Positions 5,650-53,884 are shown, counted from the first letter of the stretch. The stretch: 64,000 nucleotides of DNA from Mytilus edulis (GCF_963676685.1 NC_092355.1:18042001-18106000), one strand, 5' to 3'. Numbers and translations are program-made. Notes: a model not told the origin generated them from the sequence alone.

Positions 5650-5732
5650 CTTATACCAGCACACCACAATAAACATTTAGAGAATGTTACTGGCAAAATA
5701 TCCCAAATTCCAACTCAGGGTAAAGCAATCGA
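5650..5732 (+). CDS. DCDC2: DCDC2-like exon: inter-DCX linker (LIPAHHNKHLENVTGKISQIPTQGKAI), phase 0 to 2; gene is 5'-partial in this window
   Basis: Polypyrimidine ttttcag acceptor and GA|gtatgt donor. Only one frame is open. It joins in frame to either 135-nt exon, and the peptide resembles the DCDC2 linker preceding the second DCX domain (recalled, not aligned). Confidence 0.8.
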
Positions 5733-9742: not shown

Positions 9743-9835
9743 TAAATTTCAATTTGACCCTTCTAAAACTTCACCCACTTAAGTCTAGGTCCTTTATGAC
9801 AAGATGCTTAATGTTCCTTTCATCTTCTGAATTAC

Positions 9836-10031: not shown

Positions 10032-10066
<35 letters not shown>

Positions 10067-13939: not shown

Positions 13940-14074
13940 TATCGTAGTAAATGGGCGCTTTACAGAAAGTGCAATTAAGGTTTGCCTTTTACCACACCAG
14001 CAGCATTCCTTTCATGAGACAGCTAAAGCCATAGCGGAAAAAGTTGCAGATAGTTTAAACTACCGGTGTGACGA
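13940..14074 (+). CDS. DCDC2: DCX domain N-half, alternative exon A (IVVNGRFTESAIKVCLLPHQQHSFHETAKAIAEKVADSLNYRCD)
   Basis: ttctttcag acceptor, GA|gtgagt donor, 135 nt, phase 2-2. Contains the DCX 'I.v..NG' motif. Confidence 0.85.
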
Positions 14075-14110: not shown

Positions 14111-14245
14111 AGTTTTCGTTAATGGGCAGGATATTGATAAGCCAACTACGGTTGGATTGTCTTATCGACAGTTGGAAAATATGACTGAGGCAATAAAGGT
14201 TGTTCACGAGGCCATTAGAGAGAAGCATCAGTATCGGGTCGATCA
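14111..14245 (+). CDS. DCDC2: DCX domain N-half, alternative exon B (VFVNGQDIDKPTTVGLSYRQLENMTEAIKVVHEAIREKHQYRVD)
   Basis: ttaatttcag acceptor, CA|gtaagt donor, 135 nt, phase 2-2. Colinear without gaps with exon A. Confidence 0.85.
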
Positions 14246-15997: not shown

Positions 15998-16156
15998 GAT
16001 CTGTGATTTAGAGGGACATGTTGTAACAGATGTTAACCAATTAGAAACTGGAGGACTTTACGTAGCCAAAAATTCCTATCACACATTCAAACCGGGTAGA
16101 TACGAACCTCATGGGCGTAAAAATATTATTGTTCCATTATCACCTAGAGACAAACA
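15998..16156 (+). CDS. DCDC2: DCX domain C-half (ICDLEGHVVTDVNQLETGGLYVAKNSYHTFKPGRY...)
   Basis: tttttag acceptor, CA|gtaagt donor, 159 nt, phase 2-2. Matches the DCX consensus 'ly.l.G..v.....l..g..YVA....F....Y'. Confidence 0.9.
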
Positions 16157-16466: not shown

Positions 16467-16493
16467 ACAAACTAAATACTTATGGAAAGAAAG
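16467..16493 (+). CDS. DCDC2: 27-nt microexon (QTKYLWKE)
   Basis: tctttctttttcag acceptor, AAG|gtaaga donor, phase 2-2, open frame. Confidence 0.75.
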
Positions 16494-26720: not shown

Positions 26721-26792
26721 AACGCTGCCACCAATAAACAGTCAAAAGAAACACTCACCAGACCATTCTGTTAGTTCATATCCAGAAACTAG
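26721..26792 (+). CDS. DCDC2: 72-nt exon (TLPPINSQKKHSPDHSVSSYPET)
   Basis: aatttcag acceptor, AG|gttagt donor, phase 2-2. Carries the LPPI motif recalled from DCDC2 downstream of DCX2. Confidence 0.8.
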
Positions 26793-28832
26793 GTTAGTAT
26801 GCTTAGATTCATGTCAGCAGTTATTTTAAGAGGCTAGTAAATATCAGGCAAATCCTATGATATGGGTGGCACAACACGATTTTTTTCCCACAGAATTTTT
26901 GGTTCCAATGCAATGTTTATATCATACAAAGGATATATATGTCAAAGATATTTTGAATCAACAGTGGATGGCTCAGAAAATGATTTTAAAGTTCACTAAC
27001 AATGCAACTAAATTTTGTACAAAATGAAGAGTTATCTCCCCTTTTCAATGAATTTTCAGTGCTTTCTATGTATTTTTTTTTCTCTTTATTTGTTGCAGTT
27101 AATAAAAAACAAAATTTGACTTCGAGAAAGAATGAATTTGTGATATGAAATAGATAAAAAAATATTGAAAACAAAATATGTCATGTGCCATCCACTGCCT
27201 GGTTTTTCCATGGACACCCTCTAAAGTATTACAATGGATTTGTTTATTTTCGTTGGTACCAATTTTGTTAGATTGCATAAAAAATTTATTTTCTACGATA
27301 TTGAATTTTGTGGTTTAGCCAAAGTCTGCATACAAGCCTATAGATATTTTGTATTTAGTGTAACATTTATATTTTTGTTCATGTATAACCTTGACATCCT
27401 GAAAAATGGTATTCCATTAATAATGAGGATTCACAGTTCTTGTTTTTGTTGTTGGGTTTTTGTTCTCTTGTTTTTGTTTGCAATTGATTATATATTGATT
27501 CTATCAGAGAAGAAACAAGAACTATCTTTAAAAAAGACATTCGACGTATTTAAATTTGAGTATTATGTTTAAAACTATCATTTCGATAACCTTCAGAAGC
27601 ACAAAGATACCATTAGCGTTTTCTCTGTTTGTGTTCAGTATTCTCGGTCCTCATATCTTTCTGTTTACATTTACCAAAACCCCGCGGAAATCTCACATGC
27701 GTAGGTGCGTTCTAAAAGTCATGTACGTTCGTACAACAAAGTTTACATTATAAATTATATAATTGTCCCGAATAAACAGCTGTCACGGATGCAAAGAGCT
27801 ATTGGAGAAACAATTATTTTAATAAAAATATAAATCTTTGTAAGATCTAGTTCAAATATTTATAGTTTTTCACTTGCTTTCCATCATGATATAATTAACG
27901 AGACGTTTTTTCAAACACAACCTAATCACCCACCATGACAGCATTTTGTCCAATCACAGAAAGGATTTTCGAGCATGCGTATTCTGTTGCCATAGTTAAG
28001 CGTCCTTAAGTTCAAAGGGCATAAACCAAAACTATACCGACTACGTCGGAAAAAGTAACACACAGAAAAAAATGAGGGTTTATTTGTTTTGCATACTATT
28101 TTTATGGTTATTCATCAGAGACATCGTTTTCCACCATTTGGAGTTTTTACAATAGTACTTCGGTTGAAAAATTATGTGGGTGGATGCCAAAGCGATAATA
28201 TCACAAAAACAATTGAAGACTAATCATAAATTTGATTTCAAACAGATCTTCAAATCGGCAACTTAGAAAGGATTTTTCTAATAACTTCCTTGTGTCAGGA
28301 TGATATATTGATTTAATAATTATTTTGTAGAAAAAGAAATCAGGTGAATGGTGTTCCAGTGAAAGCAGCAAAACACACGAAACGAACTCCAAAACAAGCA
28401 GATTATGATAAAGGTATGATACGTAATTGTTCTCATAAATACACGAATGAACCACAAAACACAACAAAACCACACAAATCAAATACAAAAACAAACTGAT
28501 TATGAGAAAGGTAGACTATGTCACTATTCTAATAATGATAACTATACAAATCAAACACGATAACAAAATGATTATGAGAAATGTAAACTATATATAGTAT
28601 AATCTACCGTGCTATCAACAGAATAAGAAATCTACATGACACATTCTACAAATCCTTTTATGCAAAATGAAATTAAGTACAATACATTTTTACTGATCTG
28701 TTTGAATACACTTGAAGCATTCATAAAAATATTTGTGGTAGAGTTTATTATTTCTTCCATGTATATTGTTAAATATGTTCTTCAAAAATTTGTTTGAAAA
28801 ATAAAAAAATATTATATTATTTCATATAATAG

Positions 28833-28837
28833 AAAAG
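28833..28837 (+). CDS. DCDC2: 5-nt microexon AAAAG (frame-restoring)
   Basis: atag|AAAAG|gtaagt. It bridges a phase-2 donor (26792) and a phase-1 acceptor (29829): AG|A AAA G|AT reads R-K-D. Confidence 0.6.
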
Positions 28838-29828: not shown

Positions 29829-29953
29829 ATGATGGTGGTGTTTTTAAGGCCAAAGGTCAAAGCAGGGACACTAGGGGAGCAAAAGAGGTGCGTGATAATG
29901 GGGACACAAAAGTAGATCTTCCAATTGACCAAGTTCGTGCAGAGGAAGTTAAA
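29829..29953 (+). CDS. DCDC2: DCDC2 C-terminal conserved motif exon (DDGGVFKAKGQSRDTRGAKEVRDNGDTKVDLPIDQVRAEEVK)
   Basis: ttgcag acceptor, AAA|gtaaat donor, phase 1 to 0. Strongly resembles the vertebrate DCDC2 segment 'GIFKA...ETRGAAEVQEDEDTQVEVPVDQRPAE' (recalled). Confidence 0.88.
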
Positions 29954-32832: not shown

Positions 32833-32922
32833 GAAGAGGAGAACTTTACTGATGAAACTGAAGCTAAAGTTCCAAGTGGCGTGGAACTAAGTCGTCAGCC
32901 TTCTGAGTCGTCAGAGCAACAG
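32833..32922 (+). CDS. DCDC2: 90-nt acidic exon (EEENFTDETEAKVPSGVELSRQPSESSEQQ)
   Basis: ttgtcag acceptor, CAG|gttaga donor, phase 0-0. Continues the AEEVK-EEE motif. Confidence 0.8.
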
Positions 32923-34075: not shown

Positions 34076-34108
34076 GATGAAAGGATAAGGAAAGAGAAAC
34101 AGGGCAAG
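34076..34108 (+). CDS. DCDC2: 33-nt microexon (DERIRKEKQGK)
   Basis: ctaatattacag acceptor, AAG|gtaagt donor, phase 0-0, purine-rich. Confidence 0.75.
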
Positions 34109-34109
34109 G

Positions 34110-40057: not shown

Positions 40058-40537
40058 GATATAAACAACAAGGCACCCACGAAGCAAGCAGATCACTCGC
40101 ACAGCAGGACGATTCAAAATGGTGACAGGTCACAAGCAGATCAATCGCACAGCAGGACAATTCAAAACGGTGACAGGTCACAGGCTAAAGGGGAACAGAG
40201 TAAACCAGTCGTCAACAATTCTCAAAACAAAACAGTGCAACAAAATACCAAACAAAGCACTTACAAGTCAAACAGTAAAGCACCCCCACCTAATACCACA
40301 AAGAATGATGTAAAAAAACAGGAACCCCCTAAGGATAATAAAAATTATAGTAATCATGATTCTGTGCGTTCATCTACACCAAAAGATAACAAAGCTGCCC
40401 CTCCGTCTAAATCGCCAACAGACAGAAGGTCTGTTAGTCCAGCCAAGTCACCAGTTAACAACAAGGCTGCCTCACCAGCCAAATCACCGTCACCAACGAA
40501 AGACAAGAAGGATCCAACACCTCACGAGGAACACCAG
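40058..40537 (+). CDS. DCDC2: 480-nt exon, disordered S/K/P-rich linker with SPAK/KSP motifs and an internal 16-aa duplication
   Basis: gatag acceptor, CAG|gtagac donor, phase 0-0, in frame with ORF 40235..40570. It ends EEHQ, which completes the next IQ unit (EEHQ|AATKIQ). Confidence 0.8.
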
Positions 40538-40559
40538 GTAGACATTACTAAGGACAAAT

Positions 40560-41105
40560 TATGTTGCTAAAATCCAACTTAGTGTAATTTTCAAATTTTA
40601 AAACAACTGTTGCTAACATCAAACTTTCTGTAATTTTCAAGTTTTGAAAATTTGTTGCTAACATCAAACATTCTGTTGCTAACATCGAACTTTCTGTAAT
40701 TTTCAAATTTTAAAACAATTGTTGCTAACATCAAACAGTCTGTAATTTTCAAAATTTGAAAATTTTTTGATAACATCAAACTTTCTTTAATTTTCAAATT
40801 TTGAAAATTTGTTGCTAACATCAAACTTTCTGTAATTTTCAAATTTTGAAAATTTGCTGCTAACATCAAACCGTCTGTAATTTTTAAATTTTAAAACAAA
40901 TTTTGCTATCATTAAACTTTCTTTAATTTTTAAATTTCGAAAAATTTGTTGCTAACATCAAACAGTCTGTAATTTTCAAATTTTAAAACGAATGTTGCTT
41001 ATATCAAAGTTTTTGTAATTTTCAAATTTTGAAAATTTGTTGCTAACATCAAACTTTTTGTAATCATCTTATTTTGAAAATTTTTGTTGCTATCATCCAA
41101 CTCTG
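40560..41105. repeat. Minisatellite, ~45-bp unit with internal palindrome
   Basis: aattttcaaattttgaaaatttgttgctaacatcaaactttctgt about 12 times. Confidence 0.9.
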
Positions 41106-42926
41106 TACTTTCTTCTTTCTTCATCTATACCTTGTCATTGTTCCATATTGTTTAACTTGACCTTTAGCCAATCAGATTGTTTGAAATTTTTTATTTTATT
41201 TGTTTTATCATTTCTCATGGAAAAATATCAAGTTTATGGTGCTTTTGTAGAAGAGAAAGATAGGTGTTTTACAACTCAAGTCATGTTTGAATTAGAATAA
41301 AGTAAAAACAAAAATTAAAGTATATGGTGGCATATAGCTATAAAAGTAATGAAAAAAATATGTCATGAAATTATTTTTTGGTAATAACCAAGAAGTTGTT
41401 TTTTTGTTTCATACTAAGGTAAATAAAAAATAACTATAAATTGGAAAAAGGCTTTGAAAAGTAATATTTTTTTCATAAGGAAAATGGCAGAGGTCAAGTT
41501 AACAATATTTCATTATCTTATGTGTATTTCTTTTCATTAATGTTCTTTTCCATATCAATTTTCCATATTTTATTTTATTTCTGAATCAACAAGACCCTTG
41601 ATTACCTTTGAATTTATATACTAATGAAAAAGAAAATATGTTGAATTAACAAATATTTGGTAAGGCCCAGTTAATTTAACTAGAATACTCTTATACATCC
41701 ACCATTAACCCATTGGGTCTTTTTTTAGGGGGACTTTGGATGATAAAGTTCTGATTATTTTCATTTAGGGAAAAAAGGGGGAAACTTGAGAAGAATAAAA
41801 ACAAAACAAACATTTCAGGACTAACTAATATTGGTTGGGATTTTTTAATAGTAAATTATTATGCCTTTTAAAAATTTATCTATGGATTCAATCTGTGTCT
41901 ATATGTAATCACTAACATGTTTCAAATCCCAAGGTACTGAAATTTTGGCAAAAGGCATAACTCTATATTTTCTATTTGGTGTATAAATTATATTTCTTAT
42001 TACCCAGAGTCCTTCAAAATTGGAAAAAGGAAATTTTGACACATGTTCCTTATATATTTTATAATTTCTTCATTGTAATTTTTTTTTTTTTACTTTATCA
42101 CATTCATTCTTATATTAATGCATTTCATCTAATAAATCATTTCATGTTCTCTTCTGTCTTCCATATCTTTTCTTGTCAACTTTGACACAACTTTGCATAT
42201 GTCATGCAGGTTGAATTCTTTCTTTTTTAAACTTACCTTCTTCTGATAAATATTTCACCCATTTCAGTGATGCAACACGTCTTCTAAAGTTTAAACCTGG
42301 TCAGCCATTTCAGTGCACATAATATGTGTTAGGTCATTTGTAGACCACAAGTTTGAGTGGTAAAGTAAACATAATTGTTTTTTGTTCATTATTTGTACAT
42401 AAATCAGGCTGTTGATTTTCTTGTTTGAATTGTTTTTCGTTTGTCATTTCTGGGTCTTTTATAGCTGACTATGTGGTATGGGTTTTGCTCATTGTTGAAG
42501 GGTGTAATGTGATTTATATTTGTTAGTTTCTGTTTCATTTCGTCTCTTGTGGAAAGTTGTCTCATTGGCAATTTTTATAATACATGTATCAGGAATAATA
42601 CAAATTATTTAACAGAACAACAAAACACACAAACACCCAACTCCACCAAAAAGTAAACATACATGGTGACCTTCTGCTGTTGTCTGTTCTATGGTTGGGT
42701 TATTGTCTCTTTGACACATTCCCCATTTCCATTCTCAATTGTATACAAACATAGGCTAGCAACAACAACAAATAACTTGCAGTTCAAATAGCCTGATTTG
42801 GAATAGGTACAACATTATGGTTTGGTTGAACCAGTTTTGTGTACACACTAATCTTTGTATGTTAAAAAGGTTTGTCAGTTACATAAAAAAAATGTGTCAG
42901 GTGAACTTTGATATTTTTTAGTTTAA

Positions 42927-43196
42927 GGTGGTACCTAACACTACAGGGAGATAACTCTGTAAAATCAGATAAACGTTTTAATTACGTTGTGTTGTTAAGG
43001 GAATATTAAGCTTCTCAGTGATCCAAATAAGTTTTTGTCAAACTGCTATATAACCAGTGTAATTTTTCCGATAAAACGGTTGGTTCAAATTTTTTGAAAT
43101 TTTTATATTTTTGTAAAAGGGTCAAAGTAAATACTTTGTCAAAATTTTAAGAAACGAGCCAAATTAATTTTAGTTAATTTAGTGTTGGGTACCACC
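42927..43196 (+). mobile_element. TTAA-flanked MITE (Kolobok-like), copy 3
   Basis: Same TIR and TTAA flanks as 4844-5116. A partial fourth copy lies at ~59491-59553. Confidence 0.85.
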
Positions 43197-43483
43197 TTAA
43201 ATATTAACAGTGATTGATGGTTTACCCAGGATAATCTGGTGTATGGTTAGCCATGATATTATACAAGTATTCAGAAAGTAACTGGCAGAAGAAACCAAAG
43301 AGACAACCAAAACTCTTGTTTTACAAAAACCAACAATACCACTGCAAAATAGGAAATAAAAAATCAGACAGACAACATCAATGAATATTATACAAAACAC
43401 AACTTTCCAAAATCTTCATTTATGGATATTATGAAATGAAATGAATGCATGGTTCTTTCCTATGTCACTTTGTTTCTTTACAG

Positions 43484-43699
43484 GCCTCTTTGGCCGAGTG
43501 GTGTAAGAAGGTTATCTATAGCTTGGCTTCGATCTCTTCTTTACAGGCCTCTTTGGCCGAGTGGTATAAGAAGGTTATCTATAGCTTGGCTTCGATCTCT
43601 TCTTTACAGGCCTCTTTGGCCGAGTGGTATAAGAAGGTTATCTATAGCTTGGCTTGGATCTCTTCTTTACAGGCCTCTTTGGCCGAGTGGTATAAGAAG
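43484..43699 (+). repeat. Four near-identical 63-bp tandem units, each carrying a candidate 27-nt microexon (ASLAEW[C/Y]KK)
   Basis: Unit = ttctttacag|GCCTCTTTGGCCGAGTGGTATAAGAAG|gttatc. Candidate exons at 43484, 43547, 43610 and 43673. The tandem repeat is certain; exon use is inferred. Confidence 0.6.
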
Positions 43700-44095
43700 G
43701 TTATCTATAGCTTGGCTTCGATCTCAATTGACTAATCATCTACTTCCAAAAAATTACATTAACCTGTATTTGTTACTCTTGGTCTTTCCAGTGCTTAACT
43801 TTGCCTAGCATTACACATTATTTTGTTCATTTGAATGTTCCTGGCGGTTGTTTCAGTTTTGAACTCTTGCCACAAGCTTACACATCCTGTTCATTTATTT
43901 GTATTGGCCTTAGCCATCACCTCAATTCTTAATTTAGCTAATACCTATTTTTGTCTTTCTTTCTTTTCCAATTATATCAGATTTCTATCATAATCTCTTT
44001 TCCTGTAACCATGACATTACTGTTTGCATGAATGTTCCAGTTTCTGCTTTCATCATCTTTGTTTGACATCTTTACAAATGCTGACTTCTGCTGGG

Positions 44096-44264
44096 ATTCA
44101 CCTTTTCAGAATCTAATGCATTCTGGGTAATATTTTCAAAAGTATATCAAAACAATATGATTGGTCAAAATCATCATAAACAATGGAAATTCAACCAATT
44201 ACATGACTTTCTGATCTGAACAATGACATTACCCATAATCCTTTTAGATTCTGAAAGAGTGAAT
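44096..44264. mobile_element. Small palindromic MITE (second copy at ~56447-56621)
   Basis: attcaccttttcagaatctaa...tgggtaat / attaccca...ttagattctgaaa.gagtgaat. Confidence 0.7.
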
Positions 44265-45121
44265 TTTATTCAATAATGATATATTTTCAACAAGGGTGAG
44301 TAGACTTATCAACAAAACGTCTCATTTATCTTAAATCAATGTTTTATATTTATGGATCATGAAAAATTAAATAAGATATTAAAAATTTCATGTAAAAAAC
44401 AGGACATACGTAGCCATGACCAAAAGATAAAAAACATGACATGAAAAGACAAACAGTCATACCACATCTTCTTTTTTTATAAGTATAGTGAACAAAGCAC
44501 TAAAAACACAAGATTGAGCAACATATACAACAAACCTCAACTAAAAGAAACACTGCCTCTGATATCAAATAAAAATATCCTCTTAAAATATTAAGTTTGG
44601 AAATCATTTTACAGATATGGTGAAAAAACTGAATGGAGGTATAAAAAAAACACTATATCATTTAAACCGAAAACACACACTCATTGGCAATATGATATTA
44701 TGAAAATTGTTAAAACTGGTTTTCACTGAAGACAGATATTGTATATCAGGTCATTTTCTTGTAGGCTTTATTTTTTTTTCTCTATAAAACAAGCAAGTTA
44801 TCTGCGCTTATATCTAATTAATAATTATCTAAAGTTCTTATTTAATTTTCCTTTGAAATGTTAAAATCAAAATCCTGTCCAATCTTATTGAGTTGAAATG
44901 CTCAAGAAAATAGCTGATATATAGTATTTACCACATGTGTATTTGGATATGGGATTACACATTTGAATATACAGTAATTGCAAATCACATTCAGATATTG
45001 CTTCAGCATACACTGTTTACTGCAAGTGGTTTTTTAAATCTATAATTTTATCAATTACATCTCTGTATAGGTAAGTGTCTGTTTTTGACATTGCTGTTAA
45101 ATATACATTCTTTTTCCAAAG

Positions 45122-48100
45122 GCTGCAACAAAAATACAGGCCAACTACAGAGGTCACCAGGCCAGAAAAGAGGTCAACGACTTAAAGACAAAGAAGGAAA
45201 CAGATGAAAAAAAGAAGAAAGAAGATGAGCTGAGAGCCAAAGCAGCCAAAGAGGAAAATCAAGCTGCAACAAAGATTCAGGCAGGTTTCCGCGGCCATCA
45301 GGCTCGCAAGGAAATCAACCAGAAAAAACAGGTACGTGATGTGAAAAATACAAAAGAAGACGCAGCTGCAATTAAAATTCAATCGAGTTATCGTGGTCAC
45401 AAAGCTCGAAAAGAAATTGCAGATAAAAAGGTAAAAAGAACAGAGAAGAATACAGAAGAAGAAGTTGCTGTTACGAAAATCCAGGCAGGATTCCGCGGAC
45501 ACAAAGCTCGGCAGGAAATAAATCAAAAGAAACAGCAAAGGACAGAAACGAAAAATGAAGAGGAGAAAGCTGCGACTAAAATACAAGCAGGATTCCGTGG
45601 AAATCAAGCGAGGAAAGAAATAGATCTAAAAAAGAAAGAAAAAGTAAAAAATGAAGAAGAAGAAAAAGCTGCAACAAAAATACAAGCTGGTTTCAGAGGA
45701 CACCAAGCAAGAAAAGAAGTGAAAAAGAAAAAGGTATTTTGTGATAATCATGATAAACAGTTGTCTAACAATTTACTTAATGTAGATGATCTTGCTGAAA
45801 ATGGTGAATTTAATGAACAAAGTGAAAGTACAAAATCTGTTAAAATATTAGCTCAAATAGAAAGTACAAATTCTCCTTCAATTTTAGATAAAAGTGAAAG
45901 TACAAAATCTCCCTCAAGGCTATCAAAAAGTGAAAGAACTAAATCTCATTTAAGTTTTTCAAAAAGCAATCTTTCAAGTCACAATGTTAATGATCAAATA
46001 GCTCCTTTAGATTCAAGTATGTCAAAAACTGTGTCTAACATATCCCAGAAAAGTAAACGTAGTAGAGGTGGAACACATGTTGATTTAAGGGAGAGTGAAG
46101 GGATTGGGACCAGTGTTGATTCATTTAGTCCAAAGGGGTACCAGTCTGATAGGGAAACTGTAAACAAAGAAGAGACTAAAGTTAGTGATGATATTAACCT
46201 TATAGAAAATCAAACTGAGGCTCAAAATGAGAGTTGTGATAAGACACTAAAAAAGGAAAATAGTCAAGGTAGCAATATTGTAGGATGTTCACTACAATCA
46301 TCTGAAAGCACAGTAGATTCTCATTGTGATGAAGTTAAACTTGATGGTAAGAATTCAATGGAAAATTTAACACTGTCACAGGAAAATAGTCAAAATTTAA
46401 GATTACCCATGGAATCAAGACAAAATGTAATATTTCCCAAGGAAAATAGTCAAAATTTAACATTGCCCAAGGAAAATAGTCAAAATTTAACATTGTCCAA
46501 GGAAAACAGTCAAAATTTAACATTGCCCAAGGAAAATAGTCAAAAATTAACATTGTCCAAGGAAAATAGTCAAAATTTAACAATGTCCAAAGAAAATAGT
46601 AAAATTTTAACAATATCTAAGGAAAAGAGTCAAGATATAACATTGTCCAAGGAAAATAGTCAAACACTGATATTGTCAAAAGAAAATAGTAAACATTTAT
46701 CAAAGTCAAAGGAAGAGAGTGTACCTTTGATGTTACCCAAGCAAAATAGCCAAATTGTAATATCGCATAAGGAAAACAAACCAGACTTAAAACTACCTAA
46801 ACTGCTATCATGTAAAGCTGTCACGTTTGTTGATGATAAAAAAATGCACATCAAAAGGTCTTCATTCAATTTAGACCCTTTAATACCAGCAAATATAGAA
46901 GATATAAAACTTGCTCTTAGACGTTCAAAAACTTTTGGTAAAATGAGTGACTTGAGAATACAGAATTTAGAAGTTTTGAATAATTCAAGATTGCCTATAG
47001 TTATTTTACCCAAATCTTTGTCTTTTGCTGAGGACAGTTTAAAATGTGACAAGCTCGGGACAATTGAGAAAACAGACAATGGCAACTTAGACTCAAGTCG
47101 GTGTAAGAGTGCTGAAGCAATTCCAGCTTTCCTTGGGTCTATGATCAAGCATCATACTTTTCCAGAAATGTTGGAATCCGATATGGAAAAGATGTTTCCT
47201 ATTTTCGTTGCTAGGTCTAAACGTCATAAAAGTTTTCCATATTTTGAAGTTAGAAAATCTGACAATTCAAACATGGAAGGGCTAAGGTCTGCCACTGACA
47301 GCCAGGCTAGTGAACCACTTGACGGGGACGACTTTATTGATACTGACTTACATACACGATCCCCAGGGGATGGGGAGAGTCTGACAGTCAATTTTGAATA
47401 TGATAATAGTGGTAGAATGGAGGTTGATAGTCGGTGTGGAAAATTATCAAACTTAGGCCACTTGGGTAGTTTTGGGGACTCTGATACTCTAGATACTGAA
47501 TCTATCTTGAAAACAAGCAGAACTGGTACCTTTGATGAAAGTGTTGAAATTGATTGGAAAAAGAAAGATACCAGTTTATTGAGAGAAATTGAAGATGAAA
47601 GTATAGAGTTAGAATTGATTAAAATAAAACACTCGGCCACTACATATCTTCAGGCAGGGGTCAAAGGTCATTTGTCTAGGTCTTATGCTGTTCAGAAAAT
47701 GAAATTTCAGAATAATTCTGACGAAGTGACTGTTCTCCAAGCAGCAGTTAGGGGTATGATTTTACGTAAGCATCTTGAATTTCATACTTTTGATGATGAC
47801 ACAGAGGTTGAAGCAATTTGTCAGAATGATGCTGCAGTCAAAATTCAAGCCGTGTTTAGAGGTTATAGGGTTAGGAAAATGGATAAGGTCAGAATTCAAG
47901 ACAAAAAGCTCCATGTGAAAAAACAGGTAACTTTTGGTTCAGTTTCAAGAATTGAAATAATAAATGGGGAATGTAAAAGAGATCTGACAGTTATAGGAAA
48001 AGAAATTGAAGATGAAGACTCTGTGATAAAAAAAATCAATGAAGACTTTGAAGGCACTAAAACAATCCCAGATGACAAAGAAAAACAAACACCAATTTCA

Positions 48101-51100
48101 ATTGAAAATACAACAGCAACACAAATTCAAATAGCATACAGAAAGCATAAGAAAACAAAAACAGAACAAAAACTTAGTTTTATTGAAAATGCAGCAGCAA
48201 CGAAAATTCAAAATGCATACAAAAAGCATAAAGGGAACAAAACTGAACCAAAACCAAGTCTAATTGAAAATGCAGCGGCAACGAAAATCCAAATTGCATA
48301 CAAAAAGCATAAGCAGTACCAAACAAAACGAGAACTTAGTTTAAATCAAAATGCAGCTGCAGCTAAGATTCAGAAAGCATACAAAAGCCACAAAAGGAAC
48401 AAAACTGAAAATAAAGCAGCAACCAAAATTCAAAATGCATACAAAAAGCATAAACAAAACACAACTGAACCAAAACGAAGTTTGATTGAAAATGCAGCAG
48501 CAACCAAAATTCAAAATGCATATAGAAAGTATACACTGAACAAAACTGAACAACAATATGTAGTCTGTACCATTATACAAGCTTCTTGCCATGCCTACTT
48601 AAGTAGAAAGAAGGGATTTGATTGGCTTAAACAAAATGAAAAATCAGATGACACATTAGCAATTATTAGGAAAAACTTTAAATCAAAACATCTTTGTAAA
48701 CAAGAAAGTGAAAATTGGGAAAAGGAAGTTATTGACTCAGCTGTGACTGATGTACAAAATGTACACAGCAAGCAACTAAAAACAGAAGATCAGTCTTTAT
48801 ACAAATCCAAAGCAGCAGTTATTATTCAGAAACACTTCAGGGGCTTTCATATCAGGAAGGGCTATGTTAAACAGAGGGAAAGGGCAGATTGGGCTTCAAG
48901 GATAATTCAGAGAGCTTTCAAACAGTTGATTCTTAAAAAAGAACTAGAAAGAAAGGAGAAAGCAGCAACTGTGATTCAATCAAAATATAAGGGTTTTATA
49001 GCAAGAAAGCAATACAGAAAACAAAAAGAAAAGAAAGAAAAGGCAAAAGTTTTGATTCTGAAATCTTTGAAAGCTTGGTTAGTATTTAAGAAACATGTGA
49101 AAAAGACTGAAGCAGTTACTGCTCTTTCTGCAAGTGTAAGAGGTAAAATTTCACGTTTAAATCACAGGACAAAAATGGATGAACAAAAGGCAGCTAAAGT
49201 CATTCAAACAGCATTTAAAAAATATAGGTCCAACTTAGAAATGATTAAACATGATTTAAATGTAGAGGCTATTGATGTGGTTGGTTTGATTATTGGTTCT
49301 TCGTACAGTTGTTACGAAAGGCAAGTGGAACATGAAATTGAGGTCAGAGATTCTGCTGCTGTGGTAATTCAGTCCCATTTCAAAGGTTATAGGTCGAGGG
49401 TCAAATATCAACATATGAAAAGAGAAGCTGCTGCTATTGTTATTCAGTCACAGTATAAGGGTCATAGGTCAAGGGTGAATTACAAACATATTAAAAGTGA
49501 ATCTGCTGCCATGGTAATTCAGTCAAAGGTTGAATGTGAAATCAAGCAGAAGGCTGCAATTTTAATTCAGTCCCAATTCAGAGGGTTCAGGTCAAGGGTC
49601 AAGGTCACAAAAAAGAAGCTTGAAAATTCTGCTACAGTCCTCCAGGCTGCATTTAGAGGAAAGCTATGTAGAGAACAAATAAGTAAGGATGAAAAATTCC
49701 TAGCAAAAGCATGTAAAGTCTCTAAAGACCAGCATCATTCTGCTGTGAAGGTTAATTTTACAAAGTCAAAAAATAAACCACAACTTACAGAAAAAAGGTT
49801 AAATGCAGCAATAACAACACTTCAGGCTGCGTACGCAGCACACCAGACTCGCGTACAATACAAAAAACAATTCAGAGAGATCAACCCAGATAGCGCTCGT
49901 TATTTGATTTCAGCACTAGAAGGTGTCTTATCACAACAGAATGATACATGTAACATTTCAATTGATTTAGAGGATAAAAAGGGGGAACATTGTAGAAATA
50001 GTGTAAGTGTTTCAAGTTCATTAGAATCTGGTTTTGTGACTGGTCGAAGTGAATCTAAGGAGGCTGAAGGTTTGTCAGATTTTAAAATTGTGCCATATCC
50101 CTTTGAGGACAAGGCTGAGGTTGATAACCTACATGATAATCCAGATTCCAAACTGTCATCTGCTAAGCTACCAATATTTGATTCAGCAAGTGTGACTTTA
50201 AGTTCTGAAACCAAATCAAAGCTAAAAAGTCCTAGAAGTAATGATAGGTCCAATCACATGTCCAGCAAACCTGTTTATAAAGTGGCTAAGTCATTTACTA
50301 GAAGTATTGATAAATTAAGTGTAATTAAAGAAGAAAACCCACCTCCCAAAAGAGAAATAGTGAGTGAGAGTAGTAAACATGACCTTGAAAATGAAACTAA
50401 ATTGTCTACAGAAAACACTGACAAGCAAATAAGTAAAGAAAATAAACAAGAATGTGAAAATCAAAATACAAATGAGAATGAAAAATCAGTTTCTCTAGAT
50501 TTGGAGCTGCTAAAAATTGAACAAGATGTTACTATCTCAACTGATACAGTTGATACAGGTATCAATAAACAAAATCAAAGTGAAGTAAGTCAGAATGAAG
50601 TTAAACCAAATAAAAGTGCACATGAAGCTGCAGTTGTCATACAAGCTTCATATAAAGCTCATAGGGCAAATATTGAAAAGGAAAAATTAGAAATTCCCAA
50701 TACAATTATTATTTTAAAAAATCAGCAAAATAAAAATTCAATGTTTAGTGTTGATTCAATTGAGTATTACATACACAGTCACTTGCAAGCAACTGTTCGA
50801 GGATATTTAAGTAGGGTGGGTCTTGTTAATTATGGGGCATTAAATTATCGTCCTTCTGTAAAATCTAAGCAAAAAGAAACTATATGGTTCGTTTCCAAAC
50901 TTAACTCAATTCAAAATGGTGGTGGTAGAATTCATAAGGTTAAGGATAGGGATAGAAATAACAAATACTTCAATGAATTTCAGACAAAACGATTGGACGG
51001 AAAAACAGAAGCTATAACTGCCATACAGGCTGCAGCTCGGGGTTTCTTAGTTCGTAGACGAATAGAGAAGCGTGAAAACACTAGACAGTTACTGACTCTT

Positions 51101-53884
51101 AGATCTGTTGCTCAAGAGGAAGTCATGGACATTTTGGGACTTATTCATGAGCGAGACAAAGCGGCCACCACGATACAATCCCGATATCGTGGTTACAAGG
51201 ACCGCAAAGAATATAAGCGTATTAAGGTAAATGAAAAGAAAGACGATTCTCTGACATTCCTTCAAGCTAATTTCCGTGCTTTTTTAGCGCGTAAAGACAT
51301 TAATAAACGTTTACTAATGGAAATGCGAAAACTTGATACTCCTGTAAATAGGCAAGGTTACTCTGATTCTGTTGATAAGGTGCAGGCTAGTTTCCATGGA
51401 TTCCTATTAAGAAAATTAGCTTTTCCTAAACTTCATCAAATACTGAAAAGAGATGACTCAGCAACTGAAGTGCAGGCAGCCTTTAAAGCATACGTTGAAA
51501 GGTGGCACATACGGCGAAGAAGGGTTTCTGCCCTTGCTAGGTATCATAAAGCAGCTTCTGAGCTTCAAATAAATTTCTCAAGCTATTTGACGAGAAGAAG
51601 CATTTCTGCAAACATGAGTCGCAGAAACAGTTCGGCTTCAAAAATCCAAGCTGGTGTAAGAGGCTATTTTGGTAGAAAAGGATACCTACAGCAGAAACAG
51701 GCTGTTACAAGAATACAGTCTGGTTATCGTGGTTACAGAGCAAGACAACAATATGAAAGCCTGGCACAAGAAAGGAGAAGTTCTGCTGCTGCTACGATTC
51801 AGTCAAATTTCAGAGGTTTCAAAGTAAGAAAAGACATTCAATTGAAAACCAGAAATTTGGCTGTGGAGCAACTTCAAGCATGTTTCCATGGTTACTTGCT
51901 TCGTAGAGATGTTCACAATAGAATCAAGCAGATAAAAGCAGAAGAAATGCAAAAAGCTGCTGTAAAAATTCAGTCAAAGTTCCGTGGATATTCAGAAAGA
52001 CACAGATATGATGTGATGAAAAGAAATCATGTAAATGAAAATCGTAGGATAAATGCTGCTACCGAAATTCAGGCTCATTTCCGTGGGTATCTGAGTCGTA
52101 AAAAAGCACACAGGAAACCAAGACTATATTCTTCTTATTCACAAAGAAGCAATATCGGTGACAATTCCCCTCTGTTTGTAGAGGGAAATGCAGTTAGGTT
52201 TGATCTGCAAACAACTGGAAGTATAAGTTCTTCCAGGCCTCGAACTGGCAGACTGCAAGCATCGTTGTCAAATATAAGTCGTGAACAAACTTTTGATATT
52301 AAAAATGAACCTTTTGTTCCCCCTAACGATGATTATGAGTTTAGATCTATGGCACGTTCCACCACAGCACATGTAGATTCCTTTTCACACTTACAAGAAA
52401 GTTTTCGTAGTTTATTATCTAGACGTAGAAAATCCACTAAACCATCCCAGCAACTTTTTCATGAAAGAACACAGTTGAAAGCATTATCACAATTGCAAGC
52501 TTGCTTTAAAGGTTTTCTCACTCGCAGGTTAATATCTAGAATGTGCCAGTATGACAGAGACCGAAGCCCAGTCACTAGTTCCCCAAAACATCCCTCACCT
52601 GTTCCCATGTTAACAAATCCTGATGAAATAAGGGTTAGTGGTTCCTTTCAACACCCAAAACAGGAAGTACAAAGTCCCATAATGCCTTATAATTTTAATG
52701 GAGAAATGGTCAATTTTGTTGAAGATGATATCCCTGTCAGGTCCTCTTACCATCGTCAGCACAGTGATGTTGGAGGAGGACAGGAACCAGTTGATGTCAG
52801 TAAGGAAGAGGTACCAGTGCAGTATGTCATGAGAAGTAGGTCAAAAGTAAGCGCAACTGACACACATCGTTCTTCGGTGAAGCAAGACGACAAACCTGTC
52901 CAGTATCTGTATCGCAGTCGTGAATCAACACAACATCAGACTCCTCATTCCAAATACGGAAAAAGTGCTAGTCGAAATCGATACGAAGAACCATCCCCAG
53001 TTCAGTCACATGATGAGGAACCCGTAAACACTGTAGTTTCAGAAAGGAGAAGATTTGAGGAACCTTCTCCTATTCAAAGCTCTGCTAGCCCAGTTTTAAG
53101 TAAAAAGAGGTATGATGAGCTTTCTCAGATGAATGACAATACAAATACACACAGGTTTGAAGAACCTTCTCCTACGAACAACAATACAAATTTACACAGG
53201 TTTGAAGAACCTTCCCCACTGGTTCATGACCAAGAAAATGTTGATACACCATTACCAAATAAAGATGACAGCAGATATGAGGAACCATCCCCATTTTTTC
53301 CAGATGAAAAAGTTATAAATGATACAGCAAGTCAGTATAGAAGATATGAGGAGCCTTCTCCATTTTTGGATAATAACCAAGTACCTGTCTCTGAAATTGG
53401 AAGTTCTGGTAAATTTGACGTTCACACTTCAGAAGACTATGAGAATCCTAATGATATTATCACACACCGTAGCAGATTTGAAGATCCATCTCCCAGCGAC
53501 ACTGTAAATCCTGACATCGAGTACCCAACCAGCCCGAGGGACACACTTCATGACCTGCCGAGTGTAGATAAATTCCGAAATCCATCCAGAATTACACACA
53601 ATTCTAGTGAAAGTGAATTATCAATAGAAACATTTTCTCGTAAACTAGTCAATGAGATTCAGTCTAGTGCTTTACTAAAAGACGAGGCTGTGATCATTCT
53701 TCAAGCAGCATTCAAAGGATTCATCTTACGTAATATGTCACATTCTCGTCGTCTTAAAAAACTCTCAAAGATGGATTCCGGTGACAAAACCATTTTTGAT
53801 GAAACAGCTGTACCCTTTTTACAAGCTGGATTCAAGGGATATCTTACCCAGAATAGGAATGTACAAAGCCCTCCAGAAATGTAA
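45122..53884 (+). CDS. Giant (8763 nt) IQ-motif-rich coding exon of the DCDC2-like gene, about 40 IQ/IQ-like motifs, ends at TAA
   Basis: tctttttccaaag acceptor in phase 0, 73 codons upstream of the ORF-track start (which is a GTG). IQxxxRGxxxR motifs occur throughout. No ASH or calponin-homology domain was recognised, so this is not called ASPM. Confidence 0.88.
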   Translation, partial: AATKIQANYRGHQARKEVNDLKTKKETDEKKKKEDELRAKAAKEENQAATKIQAGFRGHQARKEINQKKQVRDVKNTKEDAAAIKIQSSYRGHKARKEIADKKVKRTEKNTEEEVAVTKIQAGFRGHKARQEINQKKQQRTETKNEEEKAATKIQAGFRGNQARKEIDLKKKEKVKNEEEEKAATKIQAGFRGHQARKEVKKKKVFCDNHDKQLSNNLLNVDDLAENGEFNEQSESTKSVKILAQIESTNSPSILDKSESTKSPSRLSKSERTKSHLSFSKSNLSSHNVNDQIAPLDSSMSKTVSNISQKSKRSRGGTHVDLRESEGIGTSVDSFSPKGYQSDRETVNKEETKVSDDINLIENQTEAQNESCDKTLKKENSQGSNIVGCSLQSSESTVDSHCDEVKLDGKNSMENLTLSQENSQNLRLPMESRQNVIFPKENSQNLTLPKENSQNLTLSKENSQNLTLPKENSQKLTLSKENSQNLTMSKENSKILTISKEKSQDITLSKENSQTLILSKENSKHLSKSKEESVPLMLPKQNSQIVISHKENKPDLKLPKLLSCKAVTFVDDKKMHIKRSSFNLDPLIPANIEDIKLALRRSKTFGKMSDLRIQNLEVLNNSRLPIVILPKSLSFAEDSLKCDKLGTIEKTDNGNLDSSRCKSAEAIPAFLGSMIKHHTFPEMLESDMEKMFPIFVARSKRHKSFPYFEVRKSDNSNMEGLRSATDSQASEPLDGDDFIDTDLHTRSPGDGESLTVNFEYDNSGRMEVDSRCGKLSNLGHLGSFGDSDTLDTESILKTSRTGTFDESVEIDWKKKDTSLLREIEDESIELELIKIKHSATTYLQAGVKGHLSRSYAVQKMKFQNNSDEVTVLQAAVRGMILRKHLEFHTFDDDTEVEAICQNDAAVKIQAVFRGYRVRKMDKVRIQDKKLHVKKQVTFGSVSRIEIINGECKRDLTVIGKEIEDEDSVIKKINEDFEGTKTIPDDKEKQTPISIENTTATQIQIAYRKHKKTKTEQKLSFIENAAATKIQNAYKKHKGNKTEPKPSLIENAAATKIQIAYKKHKQYQTKRELSLNQNAAAAKIQKAYKSHKRNKTENKAATKIQNAYKKHKQNTTEPKRSLIENAAATKIQNAYRKYTLNKTEQQYVVCTIIQASCHAYLSRKKGFDWLKQNEKSDDTLAIIRKNFKSKHLCKQESENWEKEVIDSAVTDVQNVHSKQLKTEDQSLYKSKAAVIIQKHFRGFHIRKGYVKQRERADWASRIIQRAFKQLILKKELERKEKAATVIQSKYKGFIARKQYRKQKEKKEKAKVLILKSLKAWLVFKKHVKKTEAVTALSASVRGKISRLNHRTKMDEQKAAKVIQTAFKKYRSNLEMIKHDLNVEAIDVVGLIIGSSYSCYERQVEHEIEVRDSAAVVIQSHFKGYRSRVKYQHMKREAAAIVIQSQYKGHRSRVNYKHIKSESAAMVIQSKVECEIKQKAAILIQSQFRGFRSRVKVTKKKLENSATVLQAAFRGKLCREQISKDEKFLAKACKVSKDQHHSAVKVNFTKSKNKPQLTEKRLNAAITTLQAAYAAHQTRVQYKKQFREINPDSARYLISALEGVLSQQNDTCNISIDLEDKKGEHCRNSVSVSSSLESGFVTGRSESKEAEGLSDFKIVPYPFEDKAEVDNLHDNPDSKLSSAKLPIFDSASVTLSSETKSKLKSPRSNDRSNHMSSKPVYKVAKSFTRSIDKLSVIKEENPPPKREIVSESSKHDLENETKLSTENTDKQISKENKQECENQNTNENEKSVSLDLELLKIEQDVTISTDTVDTGINKQNQSEVSQNEVKPNKSAHEAAVVIQASYKAHRANIEKEKLEIPNTIIILKNQQNKNSMFSVDSIEYYIHSHLQATVRGYLSRVGLVNYGALNYRPSVKSKQKETIWFVSKLNSIQNGGGRIHKVKDRDRNNKYFNEFQTKRLDGKTEAITAIQAAARGFLVRRRIEKRENTRQLLTLRSVAQEEVMDILGLIHERDKAATTIQSRYRGYKDRKEYKRIKVNEKKDDSLTFLQANFRAFLARKDINKRLLMEMRKLDTPVNRQGYSDSVDKVQASFHGFLLRKLAFPKLHQILKRDDSATEVQAAFKAYVERWHIRRRRVSALARYHKAASELQINFSSYLTRRSISANMSRRNSSASKIQAGVRGYFGRKGYLQQKQAVTRIQSGYRGYRARQQYESLAQERRSSAAATIQSNFRGFKVRKDIQLKTRNLAVEQLQACFHGYLLRRDVHNRIKQIKAEEMQKAAVKIQSKFRGYSERHRYDVMKRNHVNENRRINAATEIQAHFRGYLSRKKAHRKPRLYSSYSQRSNIGDNSPLFVEGNAVRFDLQTTGSISSSRPRTGRLQASLSNISREQTFDIKNEPFVPPNDDYEFRSMARSTTAHVDSFSHLQESFRSLLSRRRKSTKPSQQLFHERTQLKALSQLQACFKGFLTRRLISRMCQYDRDRSPVTSSPKHPSPVPMLTNPDEIRVSGSFQHPKQEVQSPIMPYNFNGEMVNFVEDDIPVRSSYHRQHSDVGGGQEPVDVSKEEVPVQYVMRSRSKVSATDTHRSSVKQDDKPVQYLYRSRESTQHQTPHSKYGKSASRNRYEEPSPVQSHDEEPVNTVVSERRRFEEPSPIQSSASPVLSKKRYDELSQMNDNTNTHRFEEPSPTNNNTNLHRFEEPSPLVHDQENVDTPLPNKDDSRYEEPSPFFPDEKVINDTASQYRRYEEPSPFLDNNQVPVSEIGSSGKFDVHTSEDYENPNDIITHRSRFEDPSPSDTVNPDIEYPTSPRDTLHDLPSVDKFRNPSRITHNSSESELSIETFSRKLVNEIQSSALLKDEAVIILQAAFKGFILRNMSHSRRLKKLSKMDSGDKTIFDETAVPFLQAGFKGYLTQNRNVQSPPEM
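46362..46780 (+). repeat. Coding 30-bp minisatellite (KENSQNLTLS/P repeats)
   Basis: Repeated ggaaaatagtcaaaatttaacattg(t/c)ccaa, degenerating toward both edges. Confidence 0.9.
52979..53494 (+). repeat. Dispersed coding R[YF]EEPSP motif repeats
   Basis: About seven RYEEPSP/RFEEPSP/RFEDPSP copies in the translated C-terminal region. Confidence 0.85.

What the first reader, a model, noticed from the sequence alone, without database searches (positions are those of the whole stretch)
5650..53884. DCX plus giant IQ-array fusion: a microtubule/calmodulin coupling protein
Seen: a phase-consistent exon chain links DCX-domain and DCDC2-tail exons to an 8763-nt exon with about 40 IQ-like motifs. The junction EEHQ|AATKIQANYRGHQARK recreates the same unit found inside the exon (EENQAATKIQAGFRGHQARK). 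Known: vertebrate DCDC2 is a protein of under 500 aa associated with cilia, and IQ motifs bind calmodulin or other EF-hand light chains. Inference: a >3300-aa isoform tethers a large calmodulin array to microtubules, functionally convergent with ASPM (CH domains plus IQ array) but built on DCX. Automated annotation might label it ASPM-like or split it into separate genes.
Basis: partly seen in the sequence, partly recalled or inferred. Interest (0 to 1): 0.85.

Follow-up and report, generated by a model that had tools for sequence, protein, structure and literature searches.

The report
DCDC2-like gene with giant IQ exon
A bivalve-type homologue of the cilia/microtubule protein DCDC2 has, as an alternative last exon, one 8.8-kb exon with about 40 calmodulin-binding IQ motifs; this design also appears in other molluscs' gene models, but no RNA read yet shows the join in this genome.

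Summary
Window 45122-53884 is one open 8763-nt exon with about 40 IQ motifs, and it occurs once in the genome. It starts at an AG acceptor kept in a distant relative (first 18 codons: 0 amino-acid changes, 13 synonymous; dN/dS 0.10). Its first Met is codon 300, so it must be spliced in phase 0 to an upstream coding exon.

The DCX and tail exons are real. An intron-less contig protein of a relative (P0295) maps onto them at GT-AG sites.

Three corrections:
1. The gene starts 16-47 kb upstream of the window, with three alternative DCX1 first exons.
2. P0295 is a short isoform. It skips tail2, the low-complexity exon and the IQ exon, and ends at 60964-61590. The IQ exon therefore lies in the short isoform's last intron and would be an alternative 3' end.
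3. DCX+IQ is not unique. DCDC2-like proteins with 1-2 C-terminal IQs are annotated in a gastropod, an annelid, a nemertean, a rotifer and a tunicate. Giant DCX+IQ models exist in Sinanodonta and Solemya.

My odds for a DCX-IQ isoform of about 3460 aa are 0.72. The function (a calmodulin array on microtubules) is inferred.

The parts
5650..5732 (+). Coding exon 3, the linker between DCX1 and DCX2 (LIPAHHNK...). Starts in phase 0 and ends in phase 2 at the donor GTATGT.
   Evidence: P0295 residues 121-149 map here at 79% identity. Exons 1 and 2 lie upstream of the window, at window -16035..-15734 and -9836..-9770.
13940..14074 (+). Exon 4a, an alternative N-terminal half of DCX2 (135 nt, phase 2 in and out).
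   Evidence: Paralogous to exon 4b (E 0.012), with the same length and phase. The relative's transcript does not use it.
14111..14245 (+). Exon 4b, the N-terminal half of DCX2 (135 nt).
   Evidence: P0295 residues 150-194 map here at 80% identity. Donor GTAAGT.
15998..16156 (+). Exon 5, the C-terminal half of DCX2.
   Evidence: Pfam DCX at 23.4-24.7 bits against a cut-off of 22. P0295 residues 194-246 map here at 76% identity.
16467..16493 (+). Exon 6, 27 nt (QTKYLWKE).
   Evidence: Found by a peptide scan with P0295. Sites CAG| and |GTAAGA.
26721..26792 (+). Exon 7 (TLPPINSQKKHSPDHSVSSYPET).
   Evidence: P0295 residues 256-279 map here at 92% identity. Splice sites.
28331..28413 (+). Exon 8 (KRNQVNGVPVKAAKHTKRTPKQADYDK), ending in phase 1.
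   Evidence: P0295 residues 279-306 map here at 86% identity. Its last G plus the AT that opens exon 9 gives the Asp seen in P0295, so no microexon is needed.
29829..29953 (+). Exon 9, 'tail1': the DCDC2/DCDC2C tail motif DDGGVFKAK...DLPIDQ. Ends in phase 0. It is the last exon shared by both isoforms.
   Evidence: 93% identical to P0295 and 57-61% to P0007 and P0076. Single copy in the genome. Proteins with this motif are named DCDC2 or DCDC2C in vertebrates.
32833..32922 (+). 'tail2' exon (90 nt, phase 0 to 0), absent from the short isoform.
   Evidence: Homologous to the segment right after tail1 in the DCX+IQ proteins P0007 (z 5.8, 0 of 200 shuffles reach it) and Tubulanus P0262 (z 4.6). 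Splice sites.
34076..34108 (+). Exon 'S' (33 nt, DERIRKEKQGK, phase 0 to 0), used by the short isoform. It lies between tail2 and the low-complexity exon.
   Evidence: Peptide scan with P0295 residues 349-359. Sites ACAG| and |GTAAGT.
40058..40537 (+). Low-complexity S/P/K-rich exon (480 nt, phase 0 to 0, no in-frame ATG), ending EEHQ. Proposed partner of the IQ exon.
   Evidence: Open frame and splice sites. It carries the motif VRSSTP, also seen (RSSTP, HSSTP) before the first IQ of P0007 and P0076. The overall alignment to their linkers is not significant.
45122..53884 (+). Giant terminal exon: 2920 codons plus a stop, about 40 IQ motifs in clusters separated by low-complexity stretches. 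ATTAAA lies 43 nt after the stop.
   Evidence: Orthologue P0001 is 44% identical over 99% of its length, with IQ cores 67% and the rest 47% identical. The acceptor is conserved and dN/dS is 0.10 against L007. Single copy.
60964..61590 (+). Distal terminal exon of the short, IQ-less isoform: P/K/D-rich, ends ...NNANT then a stop, with AATAAA 8 nt after the stop.
   Evidence: P0295 residues 364-492 map here (54% identity, E 2e-30), and both end in NANT. Acceptor CACAG| in phase 0. PolyA signal.

Best explanation
This is one DCDC2-family gene of at least 77 kb on the + strand, from G000:C12 about 18,025,966 to window 61,590.

Nine exons are shared by both forms and encode 351 aa: two tandem DCX domains and the DCDC2-type tail. 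After tail1 (ends 29953) every exon is phase 0 to 0, and the transcript can end in two ways:
- Short form, about 570 aa: 33-nt exon S, then the distal exon 60964-61590.
- Long form, about 3460 aa: tail2, then the low-complexity exon 40058-40537, then the 8763-nt IQ exon, which has its own stop and polyA signal.

Proposed working, all inferred: the DCX pair binds the microtubule lattice, as DCDC2 does in cilia. The IQ clusters each carry calmodulin or calmodulin-like light chains. The six N-terminal IQs are of the neuromodulin/Sp17 type (AATKIQAGFRGHQARK), a type that holds Ca2+-free calmodulin. The long form would then place a large, Ca2+-releasable calmodulin store, or a stiff light-chain-coated rod, on microtubules.

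Shown: the exon, its coding status from the acceptor, the shared exons, the short isoform in a relative, and the conserved architecture in other species.
Inferred: the actual joins 29953>32833>40058 and 40537>45122 here, and all biochemistry.
For: 1. The IQ exon cannot stand alone. The frame opens only 21 nt before the acceptor. The first Met is codon 300, after all six N-terminal IQs. In the relative's contig L007 the AG acceptor sits at the same place, stops lie just upstream in frame, and the upstream sequence does not align. The first 18 codons give the same protein despite 13 synonymous changes. Nei-Gojobori dN/dS over 167 codons is 0.10.
2. Exons 1-9 and the short 3' end are set by P0295, a 498-aa protein on a 2247-bp contig. 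It maps to 11 window pieces at GT-AG sites with correct split codons and has two Pfam DCX stretches.
3. Link to the DCX gene:
   - tail1|tail2|low-complexity exon|IQ exon are all phase 0, and none has an in-frame ATG before codon 300 of the IQ exon.
   - tail2 matches the segment after tail1 in DCX+IQ proteins of Sinanodonta and Tubulanus.
   - Exon S of the short form lies between tail2 and the low-complexity exon, so the exons of the two forms are interleaved.
   - The exon's first 256 residues align to P0007 606-892, and residues 1-167 to P0076 507-706, that is, to their first IQs after the linker.
   - All four bivalve proteins end with a last IQ and then ...EM or ...QM before the stop.
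4. DCX x2 plus IQ passes Pfam in Pomacea, Owenia, Adineta and Tubulanus, is borderline in Styela, and appears on a transcript-like Logan contig with 9 IQs. The Atlas holds DCX+IQ clusters of 113 members (mostly Mollusca) and 60 members (Rotifera). Their IQs share the signature AATKIQxxYRGxxxRK with this exon's first IQ.
5. The tail motif and the IQ exon are each single copy in the genome.
6. Fourteen small assemblies that the tool guesses to be RNA (62-284 M letters, against 1.1-1.8 G for DNA runs of this 1.37-Gb genome) hold 69-77% of the exon's words.
Against: - No read or contig joins 40537 to 45122, or tail1 to tail2, in this genome.
- The only spliced sequence in hand (P0295) skips the IQ exon.
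- The Sinanodonta and Solemya proteins are gene predictions and could merge a nested gene.
- The low-complexity exon has no significant alignment to their linkers.
- It was not found within 4.77 kb upstream of the relative's IQ exon, where a retroelement sits.
- A search for protein fragments bridging the junction found none.
- The kind of runs X1-X14 is a guess by the tool.
Confidence: 0.72

Rival explanations
1. Nested gene or internal promoter. The IQ exon, with the low-complexity exon and perhaps tail2, is transcribed from its own promoter inside the last intron of the DCDC2-like gene. It starts at an unfound ATG-bearing first exon and makes an IQ-array protein without DCX domains. Gene models in other bivalves would then have merged host and guest.
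For: The exon lies inside the last intron of the only transcript form actually seen, in a relative. It has its own stop and polyA signal. P0007 and P0076 are predictions. The orthologues P0001 and L007 are known only as the exon itself.
Against: No in-frame ATG in tail2, in the low-complexity exon, or in the first 299 codons of the IQ exon. tail2 is part of the DCX protein in RefSeq Tubulanus and in Sinanodonta. Exon S of the short form sits between the supposed guest's exons. IQs of the same signature end DCDC2-like proteins in five other phyla, so an IQ-bearing 3' end belongs to this gene family by descent.
Confidence: 0.2
2. The IQ exon is joined to the DCX exons, but by a different path from the one the reader wrote. 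Examples: tail1 or exon S spliced directly to 45122, or extra small exons in 40538-45121. The low-complexity exon 40058-40537 would then be absent or optional.
For: Every exon after 29953 is phase 0 to 0, so any subset keeps the frame. The low-complexity exon lacks a significant match to other species' linkers and was not seen in the relative's 4.77 kb upstream.
Against: The low-complexity exon is a clean 160-codon open frame with a polypyrimidine/AG acceptor and a CAG|GT donor. It ends in the acidic EEHQ that precedes AATKIQ in the internal units. It shares the short RSSTP-type motif with P0007 and P0076. This rival is a variant of the best explanation and is counted inside its 0.72.
Confidence: 0.15
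3. The exon is part of the species' ASPM (abnormal spindle) orthologue, or is a non-coding repeat or annotation artefact.
For: ASPM proteins are the commonest named hits to the exon, at E about 1e-50.
Against: Those hits are 22-29% identical over 13-27% of the query and rest on IQ repeats only. Pfam finds no CH or ASH domain in the exon. The single strong ASH match in the genome is on another chromosome, C2:64665319. The exon is under purifying selection and collinear with DCX+IQ proteins.
Confidence: 0.02

Closest known systems
DCDC2 / DCDC2C (doublecortin domain-containing protein 2 family)
   Same: Two tandem DCX domains at the N-terminus, followed by the conserved tail motif (GGVFKAK...DLPIDQ). 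The motif is single copy here. The short isoform (about 570 aa) has the vertebrate-like size and layout.
   Different: The vertebrate, crinoid and hemichordate representatives checked show no IQ motif. Here an alternative 3' end would add about 3100 residues with about 40 IQs. There are also three alternative DCX1 first exons and two alternative DCX2 half-exons.
Annotated but undescribed 'DCDC2-like' DCX+IQ proteins of Spiralia and a tunicate (Pomacea XP_025090944/XP_025090940, Owenia CAH1774299, Tubulanus XP_074657000, Adineta UJR16130, Styela XP_039253834); giant models in Sinanodonta woodiana (P0007, 2657 aa) and Solemya velum (P0076, 1963 aa)
   Same: Same order of parts: DCX x2, tail, linker, then IQ(s) with the signature AATKIQxxYRGxxxRK. 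The bivalve models also share the tail2 segment, 26-40 IQs and the C-terminal end. Tubulanus also has isoforms with and without the IQ.
   Different: Non-bivalves carry only 1-2 IQs (9 on one unnamed transcript-like contig, P0179). Here the array sits in a single exon that lies within the last intron of a short IQ-less isoform. I found no paper that describes this architecture.
ASPM / Asp (abnormal spindle)
   Same: A microtubule-associated protein whose length comes mostly from dozens of IQ motifs, largely encoded in one giant exon (recalled from established knowledge). IQ-array similarity at E about 1e-50.
   Different: ASPM reaches microtubules through its N-terminal ASH/CH region, not through DCX. 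No ASH or CH domain is present here, and the ASH match is on another chromosome. The likeness is convergent, not membership.
Neuromodulin (GAP-43), neurogranin and sperm protein Sp17 IQ motifs
   Same: The six N-terminal IQs (AATKIQAGFRGHQARK) are of this type. Proteins named neuromodulin and Sp17, and RIIa+IQ proteins, are among the best short hits. From established knowledge, this type binds Ca2+-free calmodulin and releases it when Ca2+ rises or on phosphorylation.
   Different: Those are small proteins with one or a few IQs, tied to membranes or to PKA-type docking domains. Here the IQs are tied to DCX domains.
RP1 / RP1L1
   Same: From recall: DCX x2 at the N-terminus plus a very long, poorly conserved C-terminal part encoded mostly by one giant last exon, acting in cilia. 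A parrot RP1 was the only other long hit to the DCX part of P0076.
   Different: RP1 has no IQ array and no DCDC2 tail motif. No membership is claimed.

Membership tests
DCX superfamily, DCDC2/DCDC2C branch | N-terminal DCX domain (Pfam PF03607) | tested here: met
   First coding exon at G000:C12:18026076-18026252 scores 69.4 bits. L005:3965-4261 scores 68.8 bits against a cut-off of 22. It lies 16 kb upstream of the window.
DCX superfamily, DCDC2/DCDC2C branch | Second, tandem DCX domain | tested here: met
   The C-terminal half on exon 5 passes Pfam at 23.4-24.7 bits. The N-terminal half-exons alone give no hit. The relative's spliced protein P0295, which maps onto exons 4b and 5 at 76-80% identity, has two DCX stretches. 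The joined window model was not searched, by rule.
DCX superfamily, DCDC2/DCDC2C branch | DCDC2-type tail motif after the DCX pair | tested here: met
   Window 29829-29953. Single copy in the genome. Proteins bearing the motif are named DCDC2 or DCDC2C in vertebrates.
DCX superfamily, DCDC2/DCDC2C branch | Binds and stabilises microtubules; ciliary localisation | not testable with these tools
   Inferred from family membership only.
IQ-motif proteins (Pfam PF00612) | IQ consensus (IQxxxRGxxxR) repeated | tested here: met
   137, 158 and 179 bits on the three thirds of the exon, with 23 separately significant stretches. 25 strict and 35 relaxed regex matches.
IQ-motif proteins (Pfam PF00612) | Binds calmodulin or another EF-hand light chain | not testable with these tools
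   No complex prediction was run. Inferred from the motif.
ASPM | N-terminal ASH domain and calponin-homology (CH) domains upstream of the IQ array | tested here: not met
   Pfam finds only IQ in the exon and only DCX in the upstream exons. The one ASH match in the genome is at C2:64665319.
ASPM | Dozens of IQ motifs in one giant exon | tested here: met
   This is a resemblance in design only.
Spiralian DCDC2-like DCX+IQ proteins (database architecture, no literature name) | DCX x2, DCDC2 tail and IQ on one polypeptide | tested here: inconclusive
   All parts are present in order, in phase, on one strand, and collinear with P0007 and P0076. No transcript evidence for the join in this genome.

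The most novel reading that the evidence does not exclude
Bivalves turned the single C-terminal IQ of an ancestral spiralian DCDC2 into an array of about 40 IQs. This makes a microtubule-lattice-anchored calmodulin store or rod in cilia and sperm. Alternative 3' ends switch it on or off, and three alternative DCX1 exons times two alternative DCX2 half-exons diversify it, giving up to 12 isoforms. Such a protein could be the missing link between Ca2+/calmodulin and the Ca2+-triggered arrest of bivalve gill cilia.
Probability: 0.2. Interest if true: 0.75.

Novelty: new variant of a known kind. Interest (0 to 1): 0.55.

Why it matters
DCDC2 is a ciliary microtubule protein tied (from established knowledge) to human deafness, nephronophthisis-type ciliopathy and dyslexia risk. 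Its link to signalling is unclear.
- Outside vertebrates, DCDC2-like proteins commonly end in a calmodulin-type IQ motif.
- Bivalves have expanded that motif to an ASPM-scale array under purifying selection.
- The same gene can also make an IQ-less form.

This gives a testable lead: DCDC2-family proteins may have been Ca2+/calmodulin-coupled microtubule proteins ancestrally. It also gives a natural system (gill cilia, sperm) to test what a calmodulin array tethered to microtubules does.

For annotation, it warns that the 8.8-kb exon may be called ASPM-like, split off, or truncated at a false Met, as happened to the orthologue P0001.

Tried and rejected
No reads were laid. I used 45122-45622 and 45665 onward, and masked those residues with X in local alignments.
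- Search for protein fragments bridging the junction (query 45122-45622): only unrelated IQ proteins, best 58% identical.
- Search with the DCX/tail part of P0076 for other long relatives: only itself, one IQ protein and a bird RP1.
- First metagenome scan: nothing. The second found L007. It settled the acceptor question but did not reach the low-complexity exon: 4.77 kb of intron with a reverse-transcriptase element.
- Extra DCX2 or tail exons that would make the upstream DCX1 exons separate genes: none in 60 kb.
- Atlas look-up of the conserved non-IQ block 47132-47821: no clear family.
- Literature: no paper on DCX+IQ. The 2006 DCX-superfamily survey does not mention calmodulin or IQ.
- Exons were searched one by one by reference, and split codons were checked by hand.
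- No complex prediction was run.

Full report
**The exon.** Window 45122-53884 (+) translates without a stop for 2920 codons and ends in TAA. Pfam IQ (PF00612) scores 137, 158 and 179 bits on its three thirds, with 23 separately significant stretches.
- A relaxed IQ regex gives 35 hits, two of them spurious. Six 27-residue units of the type AATKIQNAYKKHK and a handful of degenerate ones bring the count to about 40-45.
- Parts of the array are young tandem DNA repeats: 81 nt x3.8 at 48100-48409 and 75 nt x2.4 at 49346-49525.
- The C-terminal 301 residues occur once in the 1.37-Gb genome.
- The best relative, P0001 (2692 aa), is 44% identical over 99% of the exon. IQ cores are 67% identical and the rest 47%.

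**The exon is not a gene by itself.** The frame opens only 21 nt before 45122, behind a pyrimidine tract and AG. The first Met is codon 300, after all six N-terminal IQs.

A metagenome scan returned one contig of a fairly distant relative (L007, JYMV01052472.1; synonymous sites near saturation, pS 0.65). Its orthologous exon begins at an AG in the same place, with stops just upstream in frame and upstream sequence that does not align (41 of 100 ungapped against 71 of 100 in the exon). The first 18 codons encode the identical peptide despite 13 synonymous changes. Over 167 codons dN/dS is 0.10. P0001's 'start' Met is a Val in L007 and an Asn here, so it is a gene-caller artefact. The exon is therefore coding from its first base and must receive a phase-0 upstream coding exon.

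**The DCX gene.** The window is G000:C12:18042001-18106000. A Pfam DCX search of the whole genome found three complete DCX exons on the same strand 16, 25 and 47 kb upstream of the window. I fetched 60 kb upstream.
- Each of the three exons has an ATG and an N-terminus like other DCDC2-like proteins. Each ends at a phase-2 donor (GTACGT, GTAAGC, GTAAGA) that fits the single exon 2.
- No second set of DCX2 or tail exons exists in the 60 kb.
- They therefore look like alternative first exons.

P0295 is a member of the cluster of the closest hit to the nearest first exon. It is a 498-aa protein on a 2247-bp contig, so it is intron-less. It maps at 76-93% identity onto window pieces spread over 77 kb. 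Every boundary is a GT-AG site and every split codon gives the residue seen in P0295. The pieces are:
- exon 1C (-16035..-15734) and exon 2 (-9836..-9770), upstream of the window
- 5650-5732
- 14111-14245
- 15998-16156
- 16467-16493
- 26721-26792
- 28331-28413
- 29829-29953

Three points follow:
- P0295 has two Pfam DCX stretches.
- The 5-nt microexon proposed in another note is unnecessary.

The tail motif in 29829-29953 is single copy in the genome. In named proteins it marks DCDC2 and DCDC2C.

**The twist.** After tail1, P0295 continues into a 33-nt exon at 34076-34108 and then into 60964-61590. That last exon lies 7 kb beyond the stop of the IQ exon and ends ...NANT with AATAAA 8 nt later. 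So the one spliced form actually seen, in a relative, is a short IQ-less DCDC2-like protein (about 570 aa here). The exons tail2 (32833-32922), low-complexity (40058-40537) and IQ all lie in its last intron. The DCX-IQ protein can only be an alternative 3' end, or else the IQ exon belongs to a nested transcription unit.

**Why I favour one gene with two ends.**
1. All exons after 29953 are phase 0 to 0. None of tail2, the low-complexity exon or the first 299 IQ-exon codons has an in-frame ATG.
2. tail2 matches the segment that directly follows tail1 in the DCX+IQ proteins of Sinanodonta (z 5.8, 0 of 200 shuffles) and the RefSeq nemertean Tubulanus (z 4.6).
3. The short form's exon S sits between tail2 and the low-complexity exon, so the exons of the two forms interleave.
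4. The low-complexity exon ends EEHQ, restoring the acidic lead-in seen before AATKIQ inside the array. It also shares an RSSTP-type motif with the pre-IQ linkers of P0007 and P0076. This point is weak, because the overall alignment is not significant.
5. The exon's first 256 residues align to P0007 606-892, and residues 1-167 to P0076 507-706, their first IQs. All four bivalve proteins end with a last IQ about ten residues before ...EM or ...QM and the stop.
6. DCX x2 plus IQ passes Pfam in Pomacea (2 IQs), Owenia, Adineta and Tubulanus, is borderline in Styela, and appears on a 3.3-kb transcript-like Logan contig with 9 IQs. The Atlas lists DCX+IQ clusters of 113 (mostly Mollusca) and 60 (Rotifera) members. 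Their IQs share AATKIQxxYRGxxxRK with this exon's first IQ. An IQ-bearing end is thus a family trait. Tubulanus also has isoforms with and without it.

The vertebrate, crinoid and hemichordate representatives checked have no IQ.

**What is missing.**
- No RNA read was laid.
- Fourteen small assemblies that the tool guesses to be RNA hold 69-77% of the exon's words. That fits expression, but it says nothing about joins.
- Searches for bridging protein fragments failed.
- The Sinanodonta and Solemya proteins are predictions.
- I therefore put 0.72 on a real DCX-IQ isoform of about 3461 aa (351+30+160+2920; 3472 with exon S), and 0.2 on a nested or internal-promoter IQ protein without DCX.

**Mechanism (inferred).** The DCX pair binds the microtubule lattice, as in DCDC2. 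The IQ clusters bind calmodulin or related light chains.
- The six N-terminal IQs resemble neuromodulin/Sp17 IQs, which hold Ca2+-free calmodulin.
- The C-terminal clusters (spacing 23-33 residues) resemble myosin/ASPM arrays.
- The long form would be a Ca2+-sensitive calmodulin store or rod on microtubules.
- The choice of 3' end would decide whether a cell's DCDC2 carries it.

**Comparison with ASPM.** It is not ASPM. There is no ASH or CH domain, and the genome's ASH match is on another chromosome. The ASPM hits rest on IQ repeats alone. The likeness to ASPM is one of design.

**Novelty.** The architecture is present in public annotation but, as far as the held library shows, undescribed. 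I rate it a new variant of a known kind.

**Housekeeping.**
- The spliced model was never joined for a search.
- No N runs occur in the window.

Noticed in passing
Upstream of the window: G000:C12 about 17,995,191-17,995,544 (A), 18,017,096-18,017,440 (B), 18,025,966-18,026,267 (C); loci L002, L004, L005: Three paralogous first coding exons each encode a complete DCX1 domain with its own ATG (38-44% identical to each other). Each ends at a phase-2 donor that fits the single exon 2. No separate DCX2 or tail exons follow them. They look like alternative promoter/first-exon variants of the microtubule-binding domain. Only type C is seen in the relative's transcript.
   Followed up: partly
window 13940-14074 and 14111-14245: Two adjacent 135-nt exons have the same entry and exit phase, and each encodes the N-terminal half of DCX2. 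The relative's transcript uses the second.
   Followed up: partly
window 28413 / 29829 (and 28833-28837): The 5-nt 'frame-restoring microexon' of note s1-837348 is not needed. Exon 8 ends with G and exon 9 starts with AT, giving the Asp of ...ADYDKDDGG... exactly as in P0295.
   Followed up: yes
window 52979-53500: A short motif, (R/H)(F/Y)EEPSP, recurs seven times in the C-terminal low-complexity part of the giant exon and five times in the orthologue P0001. It is absent from the Sinanodonta and Solemya proteins. It may be a lineage-specific docking or phosphorylation motif.
   Followed up: partly
window 46362-46714: A 30-nt unit repeated 11.8 times encodes the decapeptide KENSQNLTLS in tandem, between the first and second IQ clusters. 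This stretch is poorly conserved against P0001 (14-23% identity per 100 residues).
   Followed up: partly
window 47132-47821: A non-IQ block of the giant exon is as conserved against P0001 (66-69% identity) as the IQ clusters, yet it matches no Pfam family and no clear Atlas cluster. It may be an unrecognised module.
   Followed up: partly
window 60964-61590: The short isoform's terminal exon is a P/K/D-rich tract with about ten KPP(A/V)GDN repeats. Its low complexity also opens long frames on the minus strand (60942-61586, 61054-61626), which are probably spurious.
   Followed up: no
L007:110-2736 (minus strand): In the relative, the intron before the IQ exon holds a non-LTR retroelement with endonuclease-like and reverse-transcriptase-like open frames. 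It has no counterpart in the window's intron.
   Followed up: no
P0179 (Logan contig, 3324 bp): An unnamed, Ala/Arg-rich 860-aa protein has DCX x2, a DCDC2-type tail and 9 strict IQs in one open frame on a transcript-sized contig. Multi-IQ DCDC2-like proteins therefore exist outside the bivalves seen here. Its organism is unknown.
   Followed up: no
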